Counted from the whole stretch's first letter, positions 30,270 to 46,636 are shown. The stretch is DNA of 63,748 nt, filler included, from Octopus bimaculoides (GCF_001194135.2; 5 parts of 4 records of this genome joined end to end with filler, not necessarily neighbours in it), one strand, 5' to 3'. Translations and numbers: made by a program. The notes: generated by a model from the letters alone, not told the origin.

Positions 30270-30586
30270 TTATTCAGTTTTATTCAAGATTTCTTATCAA
30301 TAGAGAAAGAGTCAGGTTCTAACCCAGATCCAAAGTTTCTTAATTGGCACCAAGGTAGAGTCAATGATAGTGCACCTGTGCACTAAAAGAGTGTACATGA
30401 AACCAAAACATAAGAACCAATACACATTATATGCTATTTGTGTGAAGAATTCTAAATGTTGAATTTTACTCTTTACTCATCTGAAGAAAATGTTTCTTTT
30501 ACATGAATTAATTTTTGTTCATCAATAATGAACATATCTGAAACAGCTGTAGTGAAACTCAGCCTATCTGTTTTATATATATGTGC

Positions 30587-30633
<47 letters not shown>

Positions 30634-30636
30634 TGT

Positions 30637-30727
30637 GCATATTCTAAAATTGGAATGATACAGAGAAGATTAGCGTGGCCCCTGCACAAGGATGACACGC
30701 AAATTCGTGAAGCGTTCCATATTTTTT
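30637..30727 (+). pseudogene. U6: U6 snRNA copy lacking an intact 5' stem-loop
   Basis: CATATTCTAAAATTGGAATGATACAGAGAAGATTAGCGTGGCCCCTGCACAAGGATGACACGCAAATTCGTGAAGCGTTCCATATTTTTT; about 4 substitutions vs canonical metazoan U6 as I recall it; ACAGAGA box and AGC triad intact; (TG)n replaces the 5' stem. Confidence 0.95.
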
Positions 30728-31280
30728 AGGCACAGGAGTTGCTGTGTGGTAAGTAGCTTGCGTACCAACCACATGGTTCTGGGTTCAGTCCCACTGCATG
30801 GCACCTTGGGCAAATGTCTTCTACTATAGCCTCGGGCCGACCAAAGCCTTGTGAGTGGATTTGGTAGACGGAAACTGAAAGAACCCCGTCGTGTATATAT
30901 ATATATATATNNNNNNNNNNNNNNNNNNNNNNNNNNNNNNNNNNNNNNNNNNNNNNNNNNNNNNNNNNNNNNNNNNNNNNNNNNNNNNNNNNNNNNNNNN
31001 NNNNNNNNNNNNNNNNNNNNNNNNNNNNNNGTATATATATGTATATATATATATATGTATGTGTGTGTGTATGTTTGTGTGTCTGTGTTTCTCCCTCTAG
31101 CATTGCTTGACAACCGATGCTGGTGTGTTTCTGGCCCCGTCACTTAGCAGTTCGGCAAAAAGTGACCGATAGAATAAGTACTAGGCTTACTAAAGAATAA
31201 GTCCCCCGGGGTCAATTTGCTTGACTAAAGGTGGTGCTCCAGCATGGCCACAGTCAAATGACTGAAACAAGTAAAAGAGT
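30728..31280 (+). mobile_element. Full-length SINE family A fused to the U6 3' end
   Basis: tRNA-like head AGGCACAGGAGTTGCTGTGTGGTAAG...GGGTTCAGTCCC, central domain, internal (TA)/(TG) microsatellite with a gap, then the common tail ending AAGTAAAAGAGT. Confidence 0.9.
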
Positions 31281-32374
31281 ATTGATTTAGTACCTAAAGA
31301 AAAAGTACTGTACACAATAATGCATGTAGTAGAGTTTATTTGTTTGTAGCTGATGTCTCACTCTGTTGCTAATCCAATATTTTGCGATGAACGAAACTTT
31401 GCATGACTGAAGGAATACACATATCAAGAAACACTGATTTGTAGCTAAACATAAAAATCTCAACATTGTCTCCTCTTCTTTTCATCTCTGCAGTTCTAAT
31501 AAAATAATTAACTGTACATCAACTGTTGATGATATTTTCATTACGGAAATTATGTCAATGTACCCAATCAAATAATGAAATCAATATGGTTATCTCCAAT
31601 AACTTATTTCAAGTTTGAATATTGATTACTGATATAAAACTATGGTTACTCAACGATTAGTAGTTGAGTAAATATTCAGATGAACATTACCATTCCATTT
31701 GAAACCAAATTTTAGCAGTTATACATTCCTACATATATCTTTGATCATTTGATACTTCAGGTTGGTAACAAAAATATAAAACCCGTATAAACTATTAGAA
31801 TTATATGTTTGTAGTATTTTTCTTCAGCAATTAATTCTGTTATCATTCATACTGTGATTGAGTTGAGCGTTATCTAATACATTATTATGTAGGTCATTAT
31901 CTCATGATACCTGATTCTAATTTATTTTACCTGTGATTTATAATATACATTATCTATTGATCTTATTACATCTCATCAGATTAAAAGAAAAATTAGGAAA
32001 TACTGGTCATGATAGTTATAGAATCATATGATAGGCGGTTCCATCATATGTACGAAAGCTGTTAGCTTGCATTACATACTATAGCCATGAAACAACCAAT
32101 AGCTAGTTGACAGTGAAACTGGTAGATAGAAGAAGCTTTATTCTCTCACTCTCTCTCACACACACATACATATATACATATATTTACATGTATATATATA
32201 CAAAATTACAAATTAAAAGGGTAAAGGATTATCAATTTATTAATTAATAAATCAATTAATAATTAATAATTTTTACCAAGCCCATCGGTATGAAAGCACC
32301 ATTATTGGTGGAGAACTTATTCAAAAGTTCATATATTTATACATATAATTAAGGGATCAGCAAAATATTTGCTT

Positions 32375-32539: not shown

Positions 32540-32790
32540 TGTGTGTGTATCATTATCATTATCGTCATTGTCATTTAATGTCCGCTTTCCATGCTGGCAT
32601 GGGTTGGATAGTTTCTCTGACGACTGGCAAGCCAGGAGGCTGCACCAGGCTCCAATCTGACTTGGCAAAGTTTCTACAGCTGGATGCCCTTCCTAACGCC
32701 AACCACATCGAGAACGTAGAGGGTATTTTTTTACGTGCCACTGGTATGGGAGCCAGTCAGGCAGCATTGGCATCGACCACGTTTGAATGG
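32540..32790 (-). mobile_element. LINE-derived/SINE 3' tail family ending in (GAT)n-like repeats
   Basis: GAAGGGCATCCAGCTGTAGAAAC...CCAACCCATGCCAGCATGGAAAGCGGAC; homologues at about 29325-29430, 33130-33246, 36990-37160 and 46085-46190. Confidence 0.75.
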
Positions 32791-36075: not shown

Positions 36076-36667
36076 ATCCATTATATTTCATTATTTAGAT
36101 CCTTAAGGCGGTGTTAAGCTATTGAAAGTCTAGATTTGAAATAAAGATTCCAGGTTCAAAATCTGCTAAGAAATATATTTAATTTTTTAACATTTCATAA
36201 TAGCCTATTCATCTTCTATGACCTCATCTTTAAAGATCTGAATGGAATCAAAGAGAAGTTGTTCAGTTAAAGAAGAAACATCAAGTTTAGGATTGTGGTA
36301 CTGTGTTTAAAAGAGCTGAAAGTCTAAATTTTGAAATAAGATTCCCAGTTTCAAATCCTGGTTAGAAATACATTTAATCTTAGGAGACTGGAGTACTGGA
36401 GGATAAATGGAATATAAACTAACAGAAACATAGAATAAAGGAGAGAAACAAAGGAAATGAAGTAGTTTAAAAATTTCAAATTATTCTGGTTTTACAAGAC
36501 ACATAGACCGAGTGGTTCAGAAATTTGATTCATAGCCAAAAGTTTCTGGGTTTAATTTGTGTTGTAAATTGGGTAAGGGTCTCCTGTTATAGCATGGGTG
36601 GACTGATGCGTTCTGAGCAAAACTGTGTAAGTAGAAAGTGTATGGAAGCCTGTTGCATATGTATGCA

Positions 36668-36900
36668 TATACAACAGGTGTAGGATTGGTCATGTGCTTA
36701 AGAAGTATGCTTCCCAGCTGCTTTGTTAAAGGTTCAGTCTCAACATGTGGCACCAAGGTTCTGACAGAATCTTGGGTTAAGTAAAGCATTGTTACTGAAT
36801 TTAGTCAATGAAAACTGAAAGAAGCCCATCACATATATATGTATTTGTGTGTGTGTGTGTGTGTGTACTTCCCCATCTTGACACCATGTGAAAATTCTAC
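36668..36900 (+). mobile_element. SINE family A, diverged
   Basis: AGGTGTAGGATTGG...GGTTCAGTCTC...GAAAACTGAAAGAAGCCC then (TA)/(TG); further heads at about 38330-38458 (-), 39360-39470 (+) and 62860-63035 (-). Confidence 0.7.
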
Positions 36901-38093
36901 GCAAGAGTCACTATCACACAAGCTGTGTCATTTCTTTCCAATCTTTCCTAAAAACGTCTGGTCATGGGCAAATATTACCTTACATGGCATCAAATAAGAG
37001 TTGGCATCTTGTTATAAAAAGCCTGCCTCAACAAATTTCCTTTGTTTCACAAAAACATGGAAAAGTGAACATTAAAACGATGACGATGATGAGAATGATA
37101 ATGACAACGATGATGAAGATGATGGCGATGACAATGAAGATGGTGGTGATGATGATGATGATGAGGATGATTTTTTACGGGCATATACATTTACATCTTT
37201 ATCAATGTCAGGGATTATGGTTATTGGTGCAGATTGAAACTAGTGTTGCTTCCCTTTATGTAAAGAAAAAACTATTAACCTCTTAATAAACATCGATCAA
37301 TAGTTATGTACTGTAGCTAATATAATAGACTCAACGCCTTGAAGGTAGTGACCTAGCATAATAACAGTTTAAGGAACGAATATATAGTCCATTGCAGAGA
37401 AGGAAGTTTAAGCATGGATAGAAACAGAAGGTTTTAATATTCTACGTTCTTTTAGGCTTTCATGTATCATAGTAGTTTCAACTGTATTTATGTTGCAAGA
37501 TTCACGAAATCATTATAATTGGCTTTATTTAACAACATTTGTTGCTGGTTTATAAAAGATAAAATTTGTCTAGACATCTTAGTAAATAAATGAATATACA
37601 ATATTTGTTTTAAATTCCAGGTGATACAAGGAATAAAGTGATAAATGAGAAATGGCAAATTAGCAGAATCATATTAGTGTTATTTTAGTGATTTCTGAGA
37701 TACAGAGAACTCTATAAATACATATCCTAATGGAATAACTAAGAATTAATTGGCTAACCAAATGTCAGATTCATTTCTGTTCTATCAGAAAATAATTTTA
37801 TATTCCAATTACATAAGTTTTATATTTTCCTCCTGTCAAATTGTATAATTCTAATTCCCCATATTTCTCCTTCTTTCTTTTTTTCTAAAATTTAAAACAT
37901 CTTGAAACATGTTTGCAGATAGATTCCAGATTAATTCTATTTTATGCCTTATCAAGCAGCACAAGAAATTAAAAGAGATTCGGCACATCTTTCATTACAA
38001 TGAATGCGTACTGCAATGATTAATTACTTTAAAACTTACCGAAATATAAAAAAAGAAATAAGATAAAACAAATTTGCATATTTCTGAAATAAT

Positions 38094-38158
<65 letters not shown>

Positions 38159-39739
38159 TGTTGTTGTTGTTATTGTTCTTGCTTGTGGTTATTGGTGGAA
38201 TTATTTTTAGATTAGTCTGGTAAAGTAGCTTATATATTCAGTGGTGTTACATCCATGAGCTTTACCAGCGATTTTATAAAGCTTGGACTACCTTATCCAA
38301 TACATTTTTCCTTTTTTGAAGAAGCCATATCTACTCACTAGGCTTTGATCTGTCTGGGGCTATAGTACAAAACATTTTCCCAAGTTGTCATACAGTGGAT
38401 TGAACCCAAAACCATATGGTTGGAAAACAAGTTTCTTACCACACATCCATGCTTCAAATGAATTTTCCCACAGACTTCAGAGATTAGAAATGTCTGGTTT
38501 TTCACTGAGCTGATTTTACTTACAACAAACTGGTTTTCCAAGTCCATCCTTTAATTGGTTTCAGATTTTGGCTGTGGAACCTAGTGCAAGTCTTCTGCTT
38601 GCCAGCTCTGGTCAAAGCGTCCAAGTGAAGCCCTCGTAAAAAAATGGATGTTAAAAGAAGATGATGATAATTATGATGAAAGATGATGATACAGCAAGAG
38701 GATTCATTTTGATGCCATCCCCCATCCCTGCTTTGCAGAATTCTTCCAGAAGATTACAATATTGGTGAAATGTTCCCCATATAAAAGTGGAATAAAGTTC
38801 CAAAATTTCCTCTGAAACCAAAGTCTTTTATATTTTGAATGGTCAGTGTATTGAACTTAGATGAGGTATCTAAACTGATGCAGCTATATTATGGAAGAAC
38901 CATTTCTCCATCTAAGAACACACATAAATTATTCTCTTCACTTTTCATTTATTTTGTGAGGTGACAAAATTTTTATCGCGCCACTACTCTAACCTGGTCA
39001 TTCACACAATTCCCTTTTGACATCTTATGAAATAAATGTAAAGTGAATATATATCAGGTTTTGTGTGCTTTTAGGTAGCTAAAATGTCTCTTCTATGATG
39101 TAATTGCTATTTTATATAAATTATGTAGCCATGTGAAAAACGGCTAATAAAACATATTGACACTTAGTTATAGTGAAAGCTTCATAATATGTATAGAATA
39201 TAACACTAATTGAAATGGAAGAGAAATTGAATATCTCAGGTTTGGTTGCCATTGTCTCTACAAATATAAATATATATAACAATGGATGACAAAATCAGGA
39301 GAATGTTGAATAAATACTTTGTAGAATTTGGTTGTGCTCTTTTATGTTCTGATTTAAAGCATTATATTGTAGTTCAGTCCCACTGAGTGACACTGGGGCA
39401 TATATTTTCTAGGTTATGCTCGGGCTGATTGAAAATTATGATAGAAATCAGGTTGACCAAAGCCGTAAATGCCTCCTTAAATGGCATGCACCTGCAATTC
39501 AGGAAATCATTGTATGAAATTCATTCCACAAGTCTTGAGACCCTTTGAGGAGAGGCATTTGTAATTGTCCTGGGTTATTGTAATTTTAGTATATTATTAC
39601 TTTACATCTAATAAGCTGACCTGCCAGCTATTGTTTTTGTTTTCTGATATTCCAGATTGAAGTAGATGGCTGTAAATGCACTTTGAACATACTCTACTAA
39701 GTAGTGCTTCCCACAGATTACTAGTTTGCTGAATGCAGT

Positions 39740-40270
39740 CAGAATATGAAGACAATTTGGAAGCTAGCTATGCAAGAAAGTTTTGTAACAATAAATGTTA
39801 TAGAAACTTATGAAATGCTCAAGACTGCTTATAAATTAACTTGCATGAGCTGACACATCTGTTTTACACTGGCACAAGATGCCAGGCAAACCAAGTCCAC
39901 TTGGGACGTATATGATGATCCCCTTTTCTGACAGCTAAGGTATCATCCACATCTACTGGATTCCCTTTGGTCAGACAGTCAATAAAAAAGTACTTTGTGG
40001 AGGTTTTGAGGGAGTTCAGGAAGAGATTTCCTCAGAAAAGTCCAGAGGGCATCTGCACCAGTCCACAATTCCATCCTGATAACTATTTGACAGAGATGGT
40101 CATCAGAACTGTCCTTCACTCTCCCTACTGTCCAGACCTTGCTCCCTGTGACATTTGATCTGAAGACGATGAAAGAAGCTGTGACAATGGTTCTGGACAA
40201 CTTCCCTTTTGGCGACTTCCGTGGAGACTTCATGAAGTGGTTGGAGCACTACAAGAAGTGCATTGAAATC
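39740..40270 (+). mobile_element. Fragmented mariner transposase remnant
   Basis: YFVEVLREFRKRFPQK and HSPYCPDLAPCD motifs; upstream ETYEMLKTAY HTH piece. Confidence 0.8.
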
Positions 40271-43200
40271 TATTGTTGTGAGAGCACGACACCCTCTGAT
40301 GTGAATAGACAAGACCACTACATATATATAGTAGCAGTCTGACGTAGTTTGCAGTCCATAGTTTGGTCTTCGAATTCCAGGTGCAGTTTACAGTTTTAGT
40401 TAGTGTGTTGGAAATATTGATTGTTGGTTCATAAAAGATTGTTGGTTCGGTGTGTGTTTGTTACTGCCGGTGTTTCTATTATGTATAGTTATAACACTGT
40501 TGCAGTGTATTCTTCATCGTCGACAATATCAACTGTTCTACAATATTGGAGATGTAAGGATGTAATAATATCAGAGGATCCTACTTTGAATGAGATTAGA
40601 GATTTGTACTTCTTTGAAATTAATGCCTCTTCTGAAAAATTTCAAGATTTCTAGAATGCATCATGTTTTTACACACAGTAGTCACATTGAATCTGTTTGT
40701 GGATTATGTTAAAAAAACAAGTAGAATTAAAAAGATTATAACAAATATTTTTCCTGCCTTGGATAGCAATGATATTCTTTGCAAATTCCCATAAGATTTT
40801 TAAACTCCTATCTTGGAGATGGTAATAATAACTGTATTTTAAAATTCATTTGGGATTTGGCAGTGTGCTGATATTTTCAGGATCAGAGTGTGAAATAAAA
40901 AAAGAAAACAAAAATGCTGGAGAAAAATGCTAAGAAAGCAAGATAAAGTAATAACAACAATAACCATTCACTCTATTATCTCTTCATTGTACATTTCTAT
41001 TATCGCTGGTGGTGGTAAAATCTATGATAATTTCATGTTAATCCTCACAAGATTTTCAATCTCCTTTCTTAAAAATGATGATAATAACTTCAGCTTTCAA
41101 TTCATGTGGGACTTTGGTGGTGGTCCTATATATATTTAGGATCAGAGTGTGAAGTGAAAAAAAAAATGAAATAAAAAAAACATAAAATCCATCAACAACC
41201 ACACACTCTTCCATCTCATTCTTGCATGTTGTATTTATTGTTGTTTTTTGTGTTAGTTGTGGTGGTGGAGGACCATGACTCCTGGTGCCTTTCATAGCAG
41301 AAGAAGAAGAAGAAGAAGAAGAAGAAGAAGAAGAAGAAGAAGAAGAAGAATTAGAAAACGATTGGCAAATAAGGCAAATATTGATAAGGTTAATCTTCAC
41401 TGCTCTCACCAAAATTTGTATTATTAAACATTAGATACACCTCATTATACTTGTAAAATTGTACTGTTTGATATATAATTAACCTCTTAATTTTTTCCAA
41501 CAGTAGAGTAGAATATAATTGTAATTTTTCAAAGCTTGTAGTAGCTATGTCGTCGTCATCTTCCTCCTCCTCCTCCTCCTCCTCCTCCTCCTCAACGTCA
41601 TTGTCATTGTCCTACCAGTGGTGATTATGAAGGTGGGATGATAGTATCATCCACCATCTCTCATGATATAACAAAAAGAAAAAAAGGAAAATCCCATACC
41701 CTTGACAAGGATATTATTGCACCAGCTATCAGAGATGTCACTGAAACTGTTATAATGAAAGACTCTTGGCCAATTCCAAAATGCAAACTTTTATGTACTA
41801 AGAAAGTGAGTTGATGCATGGATGAAATGGCCATCGAAGTGGGAAAATTTGGGGGGGTCAGAACTTCAGCATTACAAGTTTTCTATACAACCAAATGAAT
41901 CATCATTTACTCTTTTACTCTTCAACTTATTTCAGTCATTTGACTGCTGCCATGCTGGAGCACCACCTTATGGTAATTCAAATATTTTCATGGCCTATCT
42001 TAAAGGGCATTTCTGATGAATTTTCATTTTCTAATTATCTTAAAACAGATACAAAAGAGAAAACAATATTTTGATGCTAAGAGGATTATTTGAAAAAAAA
42101 AAAAAAATTAATGTCCTACTCCAGAAGATGAATACCGTGGCTATACTAGGCTTTTAAATTTTATTTTTAAAATATACACAATGCGGGTCAATAAGTCGTC
42201 AATGATTCCAAGAAAGAATCAATAAGATAAGAATTTTCCTGACCCCTGTCCTAGAACATCTCAAGAAAGTAAGCCTGCCGGTTGGCAAAGACTTACTTAC
42301 CAACACAACAATGTCAGACATGTAAATATGTTGTCTCCTCTCTACCTATTCTATTATTTCTTTACAATATGAAAAATTCTCTGCTCCTTACCTTATACAT
42401 CTAAGTCTTCCTTATACATCTATCTCTCCTGTTTCTGCCACTCCATACTGCACCTCAGTTCTTCACCCAGGTTCTGCTCTAACCATTCTGACCAATCTTT
42501 TCTCCCCAGAACAAAACTGGTCTGGAATTCCCACAAAATTAATATATTTTCTGCAGAAAATGACTTCGAGTTGTTAAAACTGATTGGAAATTGTACTAAT
42601 ATAAGCAGTCACAGAGTGCCATGACAGGAAAGGTAATGGATACAATTCCTTCCTTCCTTCCTTTCTTTAATCTTTATTCCTTCCTCCTCTTTGATAAACT
42701 TTTCCTTGCAACATAACTAGAAGAGATGGACATCAATGATAATGAGTATGGTACTTAAAATACAGTTTGACAGCAGCAAGATCAGATTAGATATGTAATA
42801 ATACACTGAAGAATTCCAGATTGGTGGAGATATGTAATCTCTCTCGTGACTTTCCTTAACATACATCACAAAGTCAAATTGCGAGAGACACGTGAAGGAA
42901 TTTGGCTTTCCAACTAGGATATTATAAGAGATTAGATAACACTAGAAGCAGAACTGATGAAAACTAAGTGGATTATTTGGGTATTTCATTCATTTATTTA
43001 TTTACTACTACTGCCACCACCACCACCATAATCAACACCATCACCATCTTTCACCATTATTGCTATTACTATTATATTTTTTTCACAGGTACATATTTAA
43101 ATATATATCTGATTCTGTAATAGTAGAAACAAATTCTTACTTTTATGGTTATTTTTTCTTCTTTTTTTCGTAATTTCACATTCAATTGAAAAGTCCAATC

Positions 43201-43310: not shown

Positions 43311-43383
<73 letters not shown>

Positions 43384-43539
43384 TAAATAGATAACAACAG
43401 ACAGATAATGTGTCAATTCACTACAGCTGTTTCCAACGAATTTTTAGTTGATTAATGGAGACATTACATTAGTAAAAACATTTTCATCGGGTGAATACAT
43501 GAGCCACAACATTCAAAAAACAATCAAAAGATTAACCTT

Positions 43540-43724
43540 GAACTCTGTTGTGCATGTGCTCTAAGTTTTAATGTTCTAGCTCACTTCTGCTGTTTATAGC
43601 AGTTCTAGGAAGGAAGGAAGGTGTATAGCATGTGATTGATGCATAGAACATGACAGAGAAAGTTGAGCAGAGAATCTGCATTAAATTTTGCCAAAAGCTT
43701 GGCAATACTTGCTTTGAAGCCTAA
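43540..43724 (+). mobile_element. Mariner 5' fragment
   Basis: ATG at 43650: MTEKVEQRICIKFCQKLGNTCFEA*, the typical mariner N-terminal EQRxCIKF motif. Confidence 0.7.
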
Positions 43725-43924
43725 AATTTTTATATTAAATGTCGAAAGTTATATTTGAATTGAATTGTACTTGGGCATAACAATTTCAATATGAAAAATA
43801 TGTGTTTAACTGCAGCAGGGTTGTGTATTATCAGTTATTCTTTTCATAATTATTTTGAACTGGATTGACATGCACTGCCATATTGTAGGGGTGGTACCAC
43901 AATCAGTGGATGTAGGATTGGTCA

Positions 43925-44520
43925 GGAGATATTTGCCAATGGCGTTTTTCTACTTGGTTCATCAGAAGATGATCTCCAGTACGTACTAAATGAGTTTGCT
44001 GCTGAGCGCTGCAAAGTAGAGGTGAAAATTAATGTTGCAAAGACTGAGACATCAGTCCTCTCAAGAAAGTCTTTCCGTAAACTCTGCATACTAGTGAAGC
44101 ATCACCAAGACAAGTGGAGTTTAAGCATCTCGGGACCATATTCCCAAGTGATGAGAATTAGAAGGGTGAATACGAAACAAGAACTGCAGGTGCTGGCATA
44201 GTAATGTACCAACTCCAGCAATCAACTCTCAAAAGAGGTAAGGTTGGTAAATAAAGCCAAACTTGCTATCTTCAATTTGATTTCCATGCCTGTCTTCACA
44301 TATGGTCATGAATGCTGAGTAATGACTAAGCGTAAACTGTTGAATACAAGTCGCCAAAATGGGGTCTGAAGAGCCTTTGGAGTATTACTACTTAACAGTG
44401 TATATAGCTCAGAAATCAGGGAATCTTTTCAGGTCAAGTCACTACTTCTCAGCATTAAATGGCCTCAATACCAATACATCAGGCATGTGATGAGAATGTC
44501 ACAGAAAAGAATTAGATAAT
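43925..44520 (+). mobile_element. RTE LINE RT C-terminal remnant
   Basis: FANGVFLLGSSEDDLQ (YADD region), INVAKTE, FKHLG, YGHEC and EIRES motifs. Confidence 0.75.
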
Positions 44521-46636
44521 AATATCTTTCGTTTCTGAAGTGTAGCATAAATTTATGTAATGTTATTTTAGAAATGTTGATTATTATTGACATTCTAAGA
44601 AGAAGCTGTTCATGAAGAATTTATGACACAATATTTCAGTACTAAAATATGCAGCTTATTTATTTCTAGTGTTAAAAGTAATTTTCTCTTGTTCAACTGT
44701 GAAATATCCTTCATCCAAAATAAATAAGTTTATATATTATCCTGCACGAAAATATATCAGTCTGTATAAATATTTTCTTTATTTTTTTTAGCTTACTAAT
44801 TAGATTAATAAATCAAATGACTAATGGAAAGGATCACTTACTGATTCATAAGGCAATTTAATCTTGAGGCTGTCAGTCTTTAAACCAACCAACCGTCTTT
44901 TGCTGATTTCATAAGAACTAGCTTCCTTTTATTTTATTTTCTGAAAATATTCTGAAAGTATGAAAAGGATTCGCTTCAATTTCTCACATTACCTCAATTT
45001 CGTGATTAATCATAACTTGAAGAGAAGTGAGATAGAATAATTATAATTACTAGAAATATATCAAATTCAGAGAATTTGGACATGTTATGAATTATACATA
45101 TTTGTACATATATATGTGTATGTATAAATGTGTGCGTGTGTGCGCTCGCACACTCACATGCATGTTGGCAGGGAAAAGTGGATGTTGAACAATGATGATG
45201 TTGATGATTTATGACAATAATGAGGGTGATAATAATGATGATGATGATGAAGAGAATGAGGATGGTTATAATGATGATGATGATACACACACACATACAC
45301 ATACACACATATATATGTCTTTATGTGCCTAGATAAATTATATTATCTTCTGATTTTAGTCATCCTCTTTGATCTATTGTATAATCATTGGGCATAAGTT
45401 TAGACCCAAATATCTTAAAGTCATTAATTAAAGCTAATAAACATCTTTAATAATATAAAGATCACGTTTAGAATGCTTGTATCTACAATATCAGAGGTTG
45501 ACATGTGTTAGAGTTGGTAAGGTTAAACCACGTTAATTATTTAAAGATGGATTCGATAAAATGTTTGCTAATTTAGTTTTCTTTTGATACATGATGCATT
45601 AAAAGGATATCTTTGCAATGGAATGGTTCATTAGAATACCTTATTGATTAGTTCAACAAAAGTACTGGAGCTTGTTAAGAGTTGATGAAAGGAAATTCTC
45701 ATATAACAAGCATTCTACAATTCCAAAGTTTTAACATTTATTAATATTGAAATATTTCCTAGTTAAATCATTAAATGTTATCAAACTACTATTAACTGAA
45801 ATAGATATTTAAGTTCATAATAATGTGCTAAGGTGATTCTACTAATTACATAAGTTCAAATCATGTTGTATCATTACCTAAAAGACACCCTCTACTTATC
45901 TCCAAATATCTAACATAAAAATGTGTTCCATGCCCAGTTCTTCAGTCAGTGGCTCTTGGTTTAAATTTCGCATACGTATATGCAAAATCTGAATCATCTT
46001 TGTAAGTTGTCTGAACAGCAACTTAACTATTCAATAATCTATAAATGATTTTTGAATTTTTGAGAAGTCGCCACATAAAAGTATCCAGCACACTCTGTAA
46101 AGCGATTGGTATTAAGAAGGGCATCCAGCTGTAGAAACCATGCCAAATCAGACTGGAGTCTTTTGTCTCTCCCCAGTTTGCCAGCTCTGTTTGAGTAGAA
46201 TTGTATGAATGTGTGAAACATCGGACAAAAGTGATACATTAGAAGCAAATCAAAATATTGACCAAAAATGAACTCGAAATTGTGCAACCCACTATAGTTA
46301 CCAAGGTTATTTTAGCTGTAAAAAAGAGTTGTTGAGTCAAAAACATAGTTCATTTGGTAGATAGATAATAAGCAGCTTTCTTTATTATAATACACATGTG
46401 ACTAATTCGGAGAAACATTACTTTCGTTATTCACACATCGTCACTCTCGTAATGCAACACTTTGTAATTTTGGTTCAAATTGAAAGTGTGAAACTATTTT
46501 CACTTTCTAATGAAACCTGGTCATTGTAGAGAAGTGTATTTGAAATAACTATTGCTGGCTATTGAGATAACGTAGAAAATGTGCAAATGAAAACAAAGTT
46601 TATTTGACATTTGTAATTGATTTGATTGCTCTGGAA

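What the first reader, a model, noticed from the sequence alone, without database searches (positions are those of the whole stretch)
30583..31280. U6 snRNA fused with no spacer to the first base of a full-length SINE: a U6/SINE chimeric retrogene or U6-headed SINE
Seen: an almost perfect U6 body (30637-30727) ends in T6 and is followed at once by AGGCACAGG..., the same start as the free family A copy at about 36666 (AGGTGTAGG). The SINE is complete through its tail. Established: U6 chimeras with LINE-1 or mRNA are well known in mammals, arising by template switching or RtcB ligation at the U6 oligo-U end, and snRNA-headed SINEs exist in crocodilians. Inference: this is the same process using a mollusc SINE RNA as partner, or a member of an unrecognised U6-headed SINE subfamily. 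I do not know of a cephalopod example, but I could not search. No obvious TSD repeats the U6 end after the SINE tail, which argues weakly against simple SINE insertion into an older U6 pseudogene.
Basis: partly seen in the sequence, partly recalled or inferred. Interest (0 to 1): 0.8.

Follow-up and report, generated by a model that had tools for sequence, protein, structure and literature searches.

The report
U6 pseudogene fused to a SINE
A dead, 5'-shortened copy of the spliceosomal U6 RNA sits end-to-head against a tRNA-type SINE in what looks like an octopod genome. It is most likely a by-product of a retrotransposon's reverse transcriptase jumping from one RNA to another, a process already documented in vertebrates, so it is a modest taxonomic extension, not a new mechanism.

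Summary
Rfam finds U6 at 30621-30726 (101 bits). True U6 similarity runs only from C30638, the foot of the 5' stem-loop, to a T6 run at 30722-30727. One A follows, then a tRNA-type SINE head with A and B boxes at the expected spacing.

The (TG)n in front of U6 is not decayed U6. It is the end of an older repeat that has a second copy at 43322-43516.

Whether the SINE is complete cannot be shown, because the 120-N gap lies in its internal (TA)n(TG)n microsatellite. No significant target-site duplication brackets the SINE alone, U6+SINE, or the larger unit.

Best explanation (about 0.55): a single retrotransposition in which the reverse transcriptase copied a full SINE RNA and then jumped onto the 3' end of U6. 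This matches the published U6-SINE chimeras made by L2/RTE-type LINEs in platypus and lizard: 5'-truncated U6 and small or absent duplications.

A U6-headed, self-amplifying SINE is unlikely. T6 is a Pol III terminator, and the U6 piece has no 5' end or promoter.

Independent adjacent insertions remain possible (about 0.2). No octopod DNA was reachable, so recurrence and the empty site are untested.

The parts
30459..30637 (+). Older repeat 'R' (class unknown) that ends in (TA)n(TG)n. The microsatellite part is 30574-30637. R forms the 5' neighbour of the U6 piece.
   Evidence: 70% identity over 197 columns to 43516-43322 on the minus strand, E 2e-23. Both copies end at the (TG)n, and the sequences beyond it are unrelated. 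TRF reports (TG)25 at 30588-30637.
30638..30727 (+). U6 snRNA pseudogene, about nt 19 to the 3' end. The ACAGAGA box and AGC triad are present. It ends in T6 (30722-30727).
   Evidence: Rfam RF00026, 101 bits. Comparison with the Rfam consensus shows 3 of 61 highly conserved positions changed. No 5' stem-loop is present in the window.
30728..30728 (+). Single A at the junction. It may be the first SINE nucleotide, an untemplated addition, or target DNA; this is undecided.
   Evidence: Sequence. The related SINE at 36676 also has A before GG. That agreement has a 1 in 4 chance of being coincidence.
30729..30893 (+). SINE 5' half. It has a tRNA-like head with an A-box-like TTGCTGTGTGG (30739-30749) and a B box GGTTCAGTCCC (30782-30792), followed by a conserved central domain (30795-30890).
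   Evidence: Read from the sequence. The central domain is 90% identical over 96 nt to an Argonauta hians locus (alignment). Neither ARAGORN nor Rfam calls a tRNA here.
30894..31090 (+). Internal (TA)n(TG)n microsatellite of the SINE, containing the assembly gap 30911-31030.
   Evidence: The same module order is seen in the ungapped relative at 36783-36866.
31091..31280 (+). Putative SINE 3' half, ending ...GACTGAAACAAGTAAAAGAGT. The last 66 nt form a stable multi-hairpin domain.
   Evidence: The last 53 nt are 91% identical to a 5'-truncated copy at 41969-41917 on the minus strand. Fold of 31215-31280: -21.3 kcal/mol, z = -3.26, with 1 of 200 shuffles folding as well. Linkage to the 5' half across the gap is unproven.
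31281..31300 (+). 3' flank ATTGATTTAGTACCTAAAGA, unique in the piece. No copy of it lies in front of the SINE, the U6 piece or R.

Best explanation
This is a dead-on-arrival chimeric retrocopy made in one retrotransposition event.
1. A LINE reverse transcriptase (RT) started target-primed reverse transcription on the 3' tail of a SINE RNA. The LINE was probably of the 'stringent' type that recognises a structured 3' end.
2. The RT copied the SINE to its 5' end.
3. It then jumped end-to-end onto the oligo-U 3' end of a U6 snRNA.
4. It copied U6 back to the foot of the 5' stem-loop (about nt 19).
5. The cDNA was joined there to the target DNA, right at the (TG)n end of an older repeat.

The product has no function. 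The U6 part lacks its 5' stem-loop and promoter and carries substitutions at invariant positions. T6 prevents Pol III from transcribing the two parts as one unit.

Shown: the anatomy and the junction. Inferred: the single event, the template jump and the LINE type.
For: 1. The U6 3' end with T6 is followed after one nucleotide by the SINE head, in the same orientation.
2. The SINE start lies 11 nt upstream of the A-box-like motif, with the B box 43 nt further on. This is where a Pol III transcript of a tRNA-type SINE should begin (read). The related family aligns from the same AGG.
3. The U6 piece fits none of the other published pseudogene classes. It has no promoter or 5' end, no A-tail and no 3' truncation. 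That leaves the class 'chimera with a non-LTR element' (PMC4476161).
4. Published chimeras made by L2/RTE-type LINEs, including with the SINEs Mon-1 and AnolisSINE2, have almost always a 5'-truncated U6. TSDs of only 1-9 bp were found in 72.5% of cases and none in the rest. The missing TSD here is therefore not disqualifying.
5. The SINE's 3' end is strongly structured and ends in short repeats (AAAAGAGT), as expected for a stringent-LINE partner.
6. U6 similarity begins exactly at the last nucleotide of the 5' stem, a plausible stalling point for an RT.
7. Chance adjacency is rare. About one SINE-type insertion occurs per 5 kb in this piece. That gives roughly 3e-4 for a SINE 5' end landing within 1 nt of a given point in the right orientation.
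8. Ligation by RtcB needs a 5'-OH and is abolished by a 5'-triphosphate (PMC6789731). A junction at the very start of a primary Pol III transcript therefore favours template jumping over ligation.
Against: - No significant TSD flanks U6+SINE. The best candidate, TATCTGTTTTA/TATTGATTTA, includes the microsatellite and has p about 0.08.
- There is an extra A at the junction. In PMC4476161 an extra A plus no TSD at a U6atac/Alu pair was read as a hint of two separate events.
- The SINE consensus, and hence its true first base and normal TSD length, could not be established, because no octopod DNA was reachable.
- The 3' half and 3' flank are separated from the junction by an assembly gap inside a very abundant repeat. 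They may belong to another copy.
- This is a single locus, with no evidence on recurrence or on the empty site.
Confidence: 0.55

Rival explanations
1. Two independent events. A U6 pseudogene or a relic of a U6 gene was already present, and a SINE later inserted exactly after its T-run. Either this was chance, or the LINE endonuclease favours the T/A-run boundary and leaves little or no TSD.
For: An extra A sits at the junction and no TSD surrounds the whole unit; PMC4476161 reads that pattern as a possible double event. A weak SINE-only repeat TATTTTTTA/TATTGATTTA abuts both SINE ends. With a blunt insertion, the bottom-strand nick would fall at ...CAAT/AAAAAA, an A-run boundary of the kind APE-type endonucleases often use (inference).
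Against: The SINE-only repeat is not significant (p about 0.23). A related SINE in the piece has a 9-bp direct repeat, GCATATACA at 36665-36673 and 37181-37189, so a real TSD of that size should still be visible. T>=6 or A>=6 runs occur about twice per kb (42 in 20.8 kb), so even a run-seeking endonuclease would rarely choose this one. A lone U6 retrocopy with an intact 3' end and no A-tail is not a class expected from known LINE mechanisms. The TATA-like string upstream belongs to repeat R and not to a U6 promoter.
Confidence: 0.2
2. Same single insertion, but the chimera was made at the RNA level. U6 ending in a 2',3'-cyclic phosphate was ligated by RtcB to a SINE RNA, and the fused RNA was then retrotransposed through the SINE's tail.
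For: RtcB-mediated U6/L1 and U6/other-RNA ligation has been demonstrated in human cells (PMC6789731). The junction uses the mature oligo-U end of U6.
Against: Ligation needs a 5'-OH, and a 5'-triphosphate abolished it. A junction at the first base of a primary Pol III transcript would need an unusual 5' end. Six T's plus an A is one or two nucleotides longer than the five-U end of the major human form. U6 is 5'-truncated, which either model allows.
Confidence: 0.1
3. Tripartite chimera. After U6, the RT jumped a second time onto the (UG)n tail of an RNA of repeat R, so that R, U6 and the SINE arrived together.
For: R, U6 and the SINE all have the same orientation. R ends exactly in its (TG)n where U6 begins. 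Tripartite B2-U6-L1 chimeras are known in mouse (PMC2104539).
Against: The two R copies differ by about 30% whereas U6 is only a few per cent from consensus, so R looks older. No TSD surrounds R+U6+SINE (p about 0.85). The class of R is unknown, and its second copy lies next to mariner-like sequence, so it may not be a retroposon at all.
Confidence: 0.05
4. Assembly artefact. The contig was mis-joined at or near the SINE boundary, or the two sides of the gap come from different SINE copies.
For: The piece has several N gaps. The one at 30911-31030 lies inside a microsatellite of a highly repeated element.
Against: The U6/SINE junction lies in uninterrupted sequence 183 bp left of the gap. A graph-based mis-join at a repeat boundary would still require reads that contain U6-T6 followed by the SINE head. 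Only the 3' half and the 3' flank are really at risk.
Confidence: 0.05
5. Member of an amplifying U6-headed SINE subfamily, comparable to the snRNA-headed SINEU elements.
For: SINEs with U1 or U2 heads exist and probably arose by template switching (PMC4494074).
Against: T6 between head and body terminates Pol III. The U6 part lacks its first 18 nt, and U6 genes use external promoters (established knowledge). The SINE's own A and B boxes would start transcription downstream of U6. The other SINE copies in the piece have no significant U6-like sequence upstream (p 0.29 and 0.53). No junction-spanning ORF relatives were found, though the database holds almost no octopod repeats.
Confidence: 0.03

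Closest known systems
U6 chimeras with SINEs mobilised by stringent LINEs: U6/Mon-1 (platypus, L2), U6/AnolisSINE2 (lizard, L2), candidate U6/RTESINE1 (opossum). Doucet et al. 2015, PMC4476161.
   Same: U6 lies upstream of a tRNA-type SINE in the same orientation, joined at the U6 3' end. U6 is 5'-truncated. TSDs are tiny or absent. The SINE has a structured, non-poly(A) 3' end.
   Different: The host is a mollusc (apparently an octopod), not a vertebrate. The partner LINE is unidentified. This is a single locus with no TSD and an assembly gap inside the SINE.
U6/LINE-1 chimeric pseudogenes of mammals (Buzdin 2002, Garcia-Perez 2007; RtcB model of Moldovan 2019, PMC6789731).
   Same: The U6 3' oligo-U end is fused directly to a retroelement sequence, and the product is non-functional.
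   Different: In mammals U6 is usually full length, the partner is a variably 5'-truncated L1 with a poly(A) tail, and 7-20 bp TSDs are the rule. Here U6 is 5'-truncated, the partner starts at or near its first base, and there is no poly(A) tail and no TSD.
SINEU, SINEs with U1/U2 snRNA-derived heads in crocodilians (Kojima 2015, PMC4494074).
   Same: An snRNA-derived sequence lies at the 5' side of a SINE body, probably added by template switching.
   Different: SINEU families amplify as units and share their junctions across many copies. Here a Pol III terminator separates the parts, and nothing suggests amplification.
Tripartite chimeras such as B2-U6-L1 in mouse and WEIRD-MgSINE-MGL in Magnaporthe (Gogvadze 2007, PMC2104539).
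   Same: Three repeats or RNAs lie in one orientation with U6 in the middle (R-U6-SINE).
   Different: Those are bracketed by 14-16 bp TSDs. Here there is none, and R looks older than U6.
Dada-U6 DNA transposons, which target U6 genes, including in oyster (PMC3706591).
   Same: A mobile element is found adjacent to U6 sequence in a mollusc.
   Different: Dada inserts at U6 positions 65-70 with a GCGCAA/GCGAAA TSD. That site is uninterrupted here, and both boundaries lie elsewhere (nt 19 and the 3' end).

Membership tests
U6/non-LTR chimeric retropseudogene (Group IV of Doucet et al. 2015) | U6 and the retroelement lie in the same orientation and abut directly | tested here: met
   One nucleotide (A30728) lies between T6 and the SINE head, and both are on the + strand.
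U6/non-LTR chimeric retropseudogene (Group IV of Doucet et al. 2015) | The junction uses the native 3' oligo-U end of U6, not an internal site | tested here: met
   The Rfam alignment runs to model position 105 of 105. T6 occupies 30722-30727.
U6/non-LTR chimeric retropseudogene (Group IV of Doucet et al. 2015) | The 3' partner is a LINE or SINE carrying its own 3' tail | tested here: inconclusive
   The head and central domain are clearly SINE. A matching tail is present at 31228-31280. The two are separated by a 120-N gap, so continuity is unproven.
U6/non-LTR chimeric retropseudogene (Group IV of Doucet et al. 2015) | A target-site duplication brackets the whole unit | tested here: not met
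   The best candidates have p about 0.08 (including the microsatellite) and no match at the U6 start. TSDs are also absent from about a quarter of the platypus U6-L2 chimeras.
U6/non-LTR chimeric retropseudogene (Group IV of Doucet et al. 2015) | Both parts arrived together, so the orthologous empty site lacks both | not testable with these tools
   No octopod genome was reachable. DNA scans of the viral, metagenome and prokaryote collections gave 0 hits. Window ORFs are not indexed.
Functional U6 snRNA gene | Full-length RNA with the 5' stem-loop, intact invariant positions and an upstream promoter | tested here: not met
   The 5' stem-loop is absent. Three of 61 highly conserved positions are changed. 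The upstream sequence is repeat R.
snRNA-headed SINE (SINEU-like) | Many copies share the same head-body junction | not testable with these tools
   Only 21.7 kb of the genome is on hand. Within it, no other SINE copy has U6 in front.
snRNA-headed SINE (SINEU-like) | Head and body can be transcribed as one unit | tested here: not met
   A T6 terminator lies between the parts, and the U6 5' end and promoter are missing. The A and B boxes lie downstream of U6.
tRNA-derived SINE with a conserved central domain (CORE-SINE-like, such as the octopus OR1/OR2 families) | Internal A and B boxes in a tRNA-like head | tested here: inconclusive
   A B box GGTTCAGTCCC and an A-box-like TTGCTGTGTGG are visible with 43-nt spacing. 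However, ARAGORN and Rfam tRNA models do not score the head.
tRNA-derived SINE with a conserved central domain (CORE-SINE-like, such as the octopus OR1/OR2 families) | Central domain shared with other SINE families and species | tested here: met
   96 nt are 90% identical in Argonauta hians, where the flanking head differs, and the domain is also shared with copies at 38325-38445 and 36783-36830. Identity with the published CORE consensus rests on memory only and was not tested.
Dada-U6 insertion | Insertion at U6 positions 65-70 with a GCGCAA/GCGAAA TSD | tested here: not met
   That site (GCACAA, 30684-30689) is continuous in the focal U6.

The most novel reading that the evidence does not exclude
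U6-SINE (and U6-LINE) chimeras could be recurrent in octopod genomes. That would make U6 a natural 'timestamp' of which LINE drove the large cephalopod SINE expansions. In the extreme version, this junction would be the founder or a member of a propagating U6-tagged SINE lineage. Nothing here excludes recurrence, because no octopod genome could be searched.
Probability: 0.1. Interest if true: 0.55.

Novelty: new member of a known kind. Interest (0 to 1): 0.3.

Why it matters
If the single-event reading is right, it shows three things.
- A cephalopod LINE reverse transcriptase performs end-to-end template jumps, as vertebrate L1, L2 and RTE enzymes do.
- This very abundant SINE is mobilised as a full-length Pol III transcript.
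- U6 chimeras could be used in octopods, as in mammals, as markers of which LINE was active and when.

I found no paper describing such chimeras in cephalopods in the searchable library. The mechanism itself, and U6-SINE chimeras made by non-L1 LINEs, are already published. The locus has no plausible function. The gain is incremental.

Tried and rejected
- **(GT)n as decayed U6 5' end: rejected.** It belongs to repeat R, which has a second copy. The Rfam 5' stem is a G-U artefact.
- **Decayed genuine U6 gene whose TATA box is TTTATATATA at 30571: rejected.** That string is part of R.
- **Upstream flank as an old SINE 5' half: rejected.** The local alignment has p 0.41-0.95. The test anchored at the microsatellite gave p 0.035 against the focal SINE and 0.68 against the relative, which is not convincing.
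- **U6-3'-like strings in front of the other two SINE copies (GAAGC..TT.CATAT at 36645; AAATTC..GAAGC at 38451-38466, read on the minus strand): chance.** p = 0.29 and 0.53.
- **R having split a full-length U6: no support.** No U6 5' stem-loop occurs anywhere in the window.
- **R copy 2 as a paralogous empty site: rejected.** The sequences after the (TG)n are unrelated.
- **TSDs for SINE only, for U6+SINE, for microsatellite+U6+SINE and for R+U6+SINE: none significant**.
- **Dada-U6 targeting: wrong site**.
- **Getting more SINE copies or the orthologous locus: failed.**
  - A junction-spanning ORF and a six-frame SINE query found only one Argonauta protein and three octopus proteins with SINE-derived stretches.
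  - Ten window ORFs are not in the protein collection.
  - The O. bimaculoides protein is not indexed.
  - The mariner/RT query led to ENA contigs, and the one fetched lacks this SINE.
  - Exact-pattern scans of the viral, metagenome and prokaryote collections gave 0 hits.
  - SINE strings occur in no searchable paper.
- **Continuity across the gap through the related SINE at 36676: unresolved.** Only the 5' module order is shared. The 3' halves are unrelated.

Full report
**What is there**

The piece is AT-rich (33% G+C) and strongly CpG-depleted (observed/expected 0.34). It is full of microsatellites and repeats.

Rfam finds exactly one family above its gathering score, U6 snRNA at 30621-30726 on the + strand (101 bits, E 1.5e-25).

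The 5' end of that alignment is an artefact. The model's 5' stem is filled by G-U pairs of a (GT)n run. Real similarity starts at C30638, which is aligned to the last nucleotide of the 5' stem, and runs to the 3' end.

No U6 5' stem-loop sequence occurs anywhere in the window, even allowing three mismatches.

Within the 89 aligned positions, 3 of the 61 highly conserved ones are changed: 30656 C>T, 30675 A>G and 30686 G>A. Two of these are CpG transitions, in keeping with the CpG depletion. The ACAGAGA box and AGC triad are intact.

The copy ends in six T's (30722-30727). It is therefore a 5'-truncated, mutated U6 pseudogene with a complete 3' end.

**The SINE**

After one A (30728) comes GGCACAGGAGTTGCTGTGTGGTAAG...

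The head is not scored as a tRNA by ARAGORN or by Rfam, even at E up to 10. It does carry an A-box-like TTGCTGTGTGG at 30739-30749 and a good B box, GGTTCAGTCCC, at 30782-30792. These lie 11 and 54 nt after A30728, the geometry of a Pol III tRNA-type SINE (read).

Positions 30795-30890 are a conserved central domain.
- They are 90% identical over 96 nt to a locus in Argonauta hians, whose head is different.
- They recur in degraded copies at 38325-38445 (minus strand) and 36783-36830.

From memory, this domain resembles the CORE domain of CORE-SINEs, to which the octopus OR1/OR2 families are assigned in the literature. I did not test that.

A related SINE family at 36676 aligns with the focal copy from its first bases, AGGTGTAGG against AGGCACAGG. 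The similarity stops immediately upstream. This is the only tool-based evidence that the SINE starts at 30728 or 30729.

**The gap**

The 120 N's (30911-31030) lie between (TA)n on the left and (TA)n(TG)n on the right.

The ungapped relative at 36783-36866 shows the same order: central domain, then GAAAACTGAAAGAAGCCC, then (TA)n(TG)n. The gap therefore sits in the SINE's internal microsatellite.

The relative's downstream part is unrelated to 31091-31280. The only other match to the focal 3' half is a 53-nt tail fragment at 41917-41969. Continuity of the two halves is plausible but unproven.

Because the SINE is highly repeated, the 3' half and the 3' flank could in principle belong to another copy. 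This weakens every TSD argument, in both directions. The U6/SINE junction itself lies in uninterrupted sequence 183 bp from the gap.

**The 5' neighbour**

The stretch 30459-30637, including the (TA)n(TG)n directly in front of U6, is a copy of a repeat I call R.
- A second copy lies at 43516-43322 on the minus strand (70% identity over 197 columns, E 2e-23).
- Both copies end at the (TG)n, and the sequences beyond are unrelated.

Three consequences follow.
- The microsatellite pre-existed and is not a decayed U6 5' end.
- The TATA-like TTTATATATA belongs to R, not to a U6 promoter.
- The U6 piece begins exactly where an older element ends. The two R copies differ by about 30%, whereas U6 is only a few per cent from consensus.

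This argues that the U6 piece is an insertion and not a relic of a resident U6 gene.

**Target-site duplications**

I compared the bases abutting each possible left boundary with the bases after the SINE tail, against 30,000 random position pairs from the piece.

| Candidate unit | Best repeat | p |
|---|---|---|
| SINE only | TATTTTTTA / TATTGATTTA | about 0.23 |
| Microsatellite + U6 + SINE | TATCTGTTTTA / TATTGATTTA | about 0.08 |
| U6 + SINE | nothing | not applicable |
| R + U6 + SINE | none significant | about 0.85 |

No TSD supports or refutes any model.

A related SINE in the piece does have a 9-bp direct repeat, GCATATACA at 36665-36673 and 37181-37189. TSDs of that size therefore occur in this genome.

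**Interpretation**

In the published classification of U6 pseudogenes (PMC4476161) there are four classes:
- genes with promoters;
- copies with A-rich tails;
- heavily 3'-truncated copies;
- chimeras with a non-LTR element.

The present copy has an intact 3' end, no A-tail and no promoter or 5' end. It is followed at once by a SINE in the same orientation, so it fits only the last class.

The same paper shows that L2- and RTE-clade LINEs, which recognise a specific 3' structure, form U6 pseudogenes only as chimeras. It reports the following.
- They do so with their SINEs: Mon-1 in platypus, six U6/AnolisSINE2 in lizard, and a candidate U6/RTESINE1 in opossum.
- In platypus the U6 part is almost always 5'-truncated.
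- Only 1-9 bp TSDs are found, and only in 72.5% of cases.

The focal SINE has the hallmarks of such a partner. Its last 66 nt fold into a stable multi-hairpin domain (z = -3.26). It ends in short AAAAGAGT-type repeats, not poly(A).

The most economical account is one event:
1. Target-primed reverse transcription of a SINE RNA to its 5' end.
2. An end-to-end jump to the U6 3' end.
3. Copying of U6 to the foot of the 5' stem-loop.
4. Joining to the target at the end of R.

End-to-end jumping is an established property of non-LTR reverse transcriptases (my own knowledge).

The RNA-ligation route demonstrated for human U6/L1 needs a 5'-OH acceptor and fails with a 5'-triphosphate (PMC6789731). This fits a junction at the first base of a primary Pol III transcript less well, so I rank it as a minor variant.

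**Rivals**

Two independent insertions remain possible. An extra A with no TSD was read that way for a U6atac/Alu pair. With a blunt insertion the first nick would fall at an A-run boundary.

Against this:
- About one SINE-type insertion occurs per 5 kb here, so the chance of a SINE 5' end landing within 1 nt of a given point in the right orientation is about 3e-4.
- T>=6 or A>=6 runs occur twice per kb, so even a run-seeking enzyme would rarely hit this one.
- A lone U6 retrocopy of this shape has no known origin.

A self-propagating U6-headed SINE is unlikely.
- T6 is a Pol III terminator.
- The U6 part has no 5' end.
- U6 promoters are external.
- The SINE's own boxes would start transcription downstream of U6.
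- The U6-like strings I thought I saw in front of the two other SINE copies are chance (p 0.29 and 0.53).

A tripartite R-U6-SINE chimera, as for B2-U6-L1 in mouse, is not excluded. However, R looks older and no TSD brackets it.

Dada-U6 transposons, which are known from oyster, insert at U6 positions 65-70. That site is intact here.

**Limits**

Nothing from the source genome or its relatives could be reached.
- The protein index holds almost no octopod repeat ORFs.
- Window ORFs are not indexed.
- The O. bimaculoides protein found is not on record.
- Six exact-pattern scans of the viral, metagenome and prokaryote collections returned nothing.

Recurrence of the junction, the empty orthologous site, the SINE consensus and read support are therefore all untested.

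**Verdict**

The chimeric-retrocopy reading is the best one (about 0.55 for template jumping, about 0.7 for any single-event model). The U6-headed SINE reading is improbable.

It is a new member of a known kind. I found no cephalopod or mollusc report in the searchable library, but the mechanism and the U6-SINE form are published for vertebrates. Interest is modest.

Noticed in passing
window 30459-30637 (+) and 43322-43516 (-): Two copies of an unclassified repeat 'R' (70% identity), both ending in (TA)n(TG)n. The second copy lies beside mariner-like sequence. Its class (retroposon with a (TG)n tail, or part of a DNA transposon) is unresolved.
   Followed up: partly
window 43810-44600 (+): Decayed LINE reverse-transcriptase fragment (LQQGCVLS...FANG..LL motifs, several stops). 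Pfam RVT_1 gives E 4.7e-4, below the curated cut-off. No similarity to the focal SINE's 3' half was detected, so there is no evidence that it is the partner.
   Followed up: partly
window 39919-40339 (+) and about 43647-43720 (+): Mariner-type transposase remnants. The C-terminal part at 39919-40339 matches many PF01359 proteins at 45-49% identity. By eye, an N-terminal MTEKVEQRICIKFCQKLG stretch near 43650 looks like a mariner HTH motif; this was not tested.
   Followed up: partly
window 36676 to about 37175 (+): A second SINE family with the same central domain and internal (TA)n(TG)n, but a different head and 3' half and a (GAT)n tail. It is flanked by a 9-bp direct repeat GCATATACA (36665-36673 and 37181-37189), a likely TSD.
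   Followed up: partly
window 32624-32702 and 46106-46184: A further repeat family present as an inverted pair (77% complementary). Its ORFs share the string RLQSDLA.FLQLDAL. The copy near 32.6 kb is again followed by (TA)n(TG)n.
   Followed up: no
window 38325-38445 (-), 39372-39428 (+), 41917-41969 (-): Degraded or truncated SINE fragments: a head plus central domain, a central-domain piece, and a 53-nt tail ending in tandem GAAGAGT/AAAAGAGT units.
   Followed up: partly
L001 10001-10300 (Argonauta hians, GCA_054771915.1): An annotated 'hypothetical protein' (P0001) is partly a translation of the antisense strand of the SINE central domain. It is probably an annotation artefact.
   Followed up: no
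window 27042-48726: CpG observed/expected is 0.34 while GpC is 0.96. This points to heavy germline CpG methylation decay in this region.
   Followed up: no
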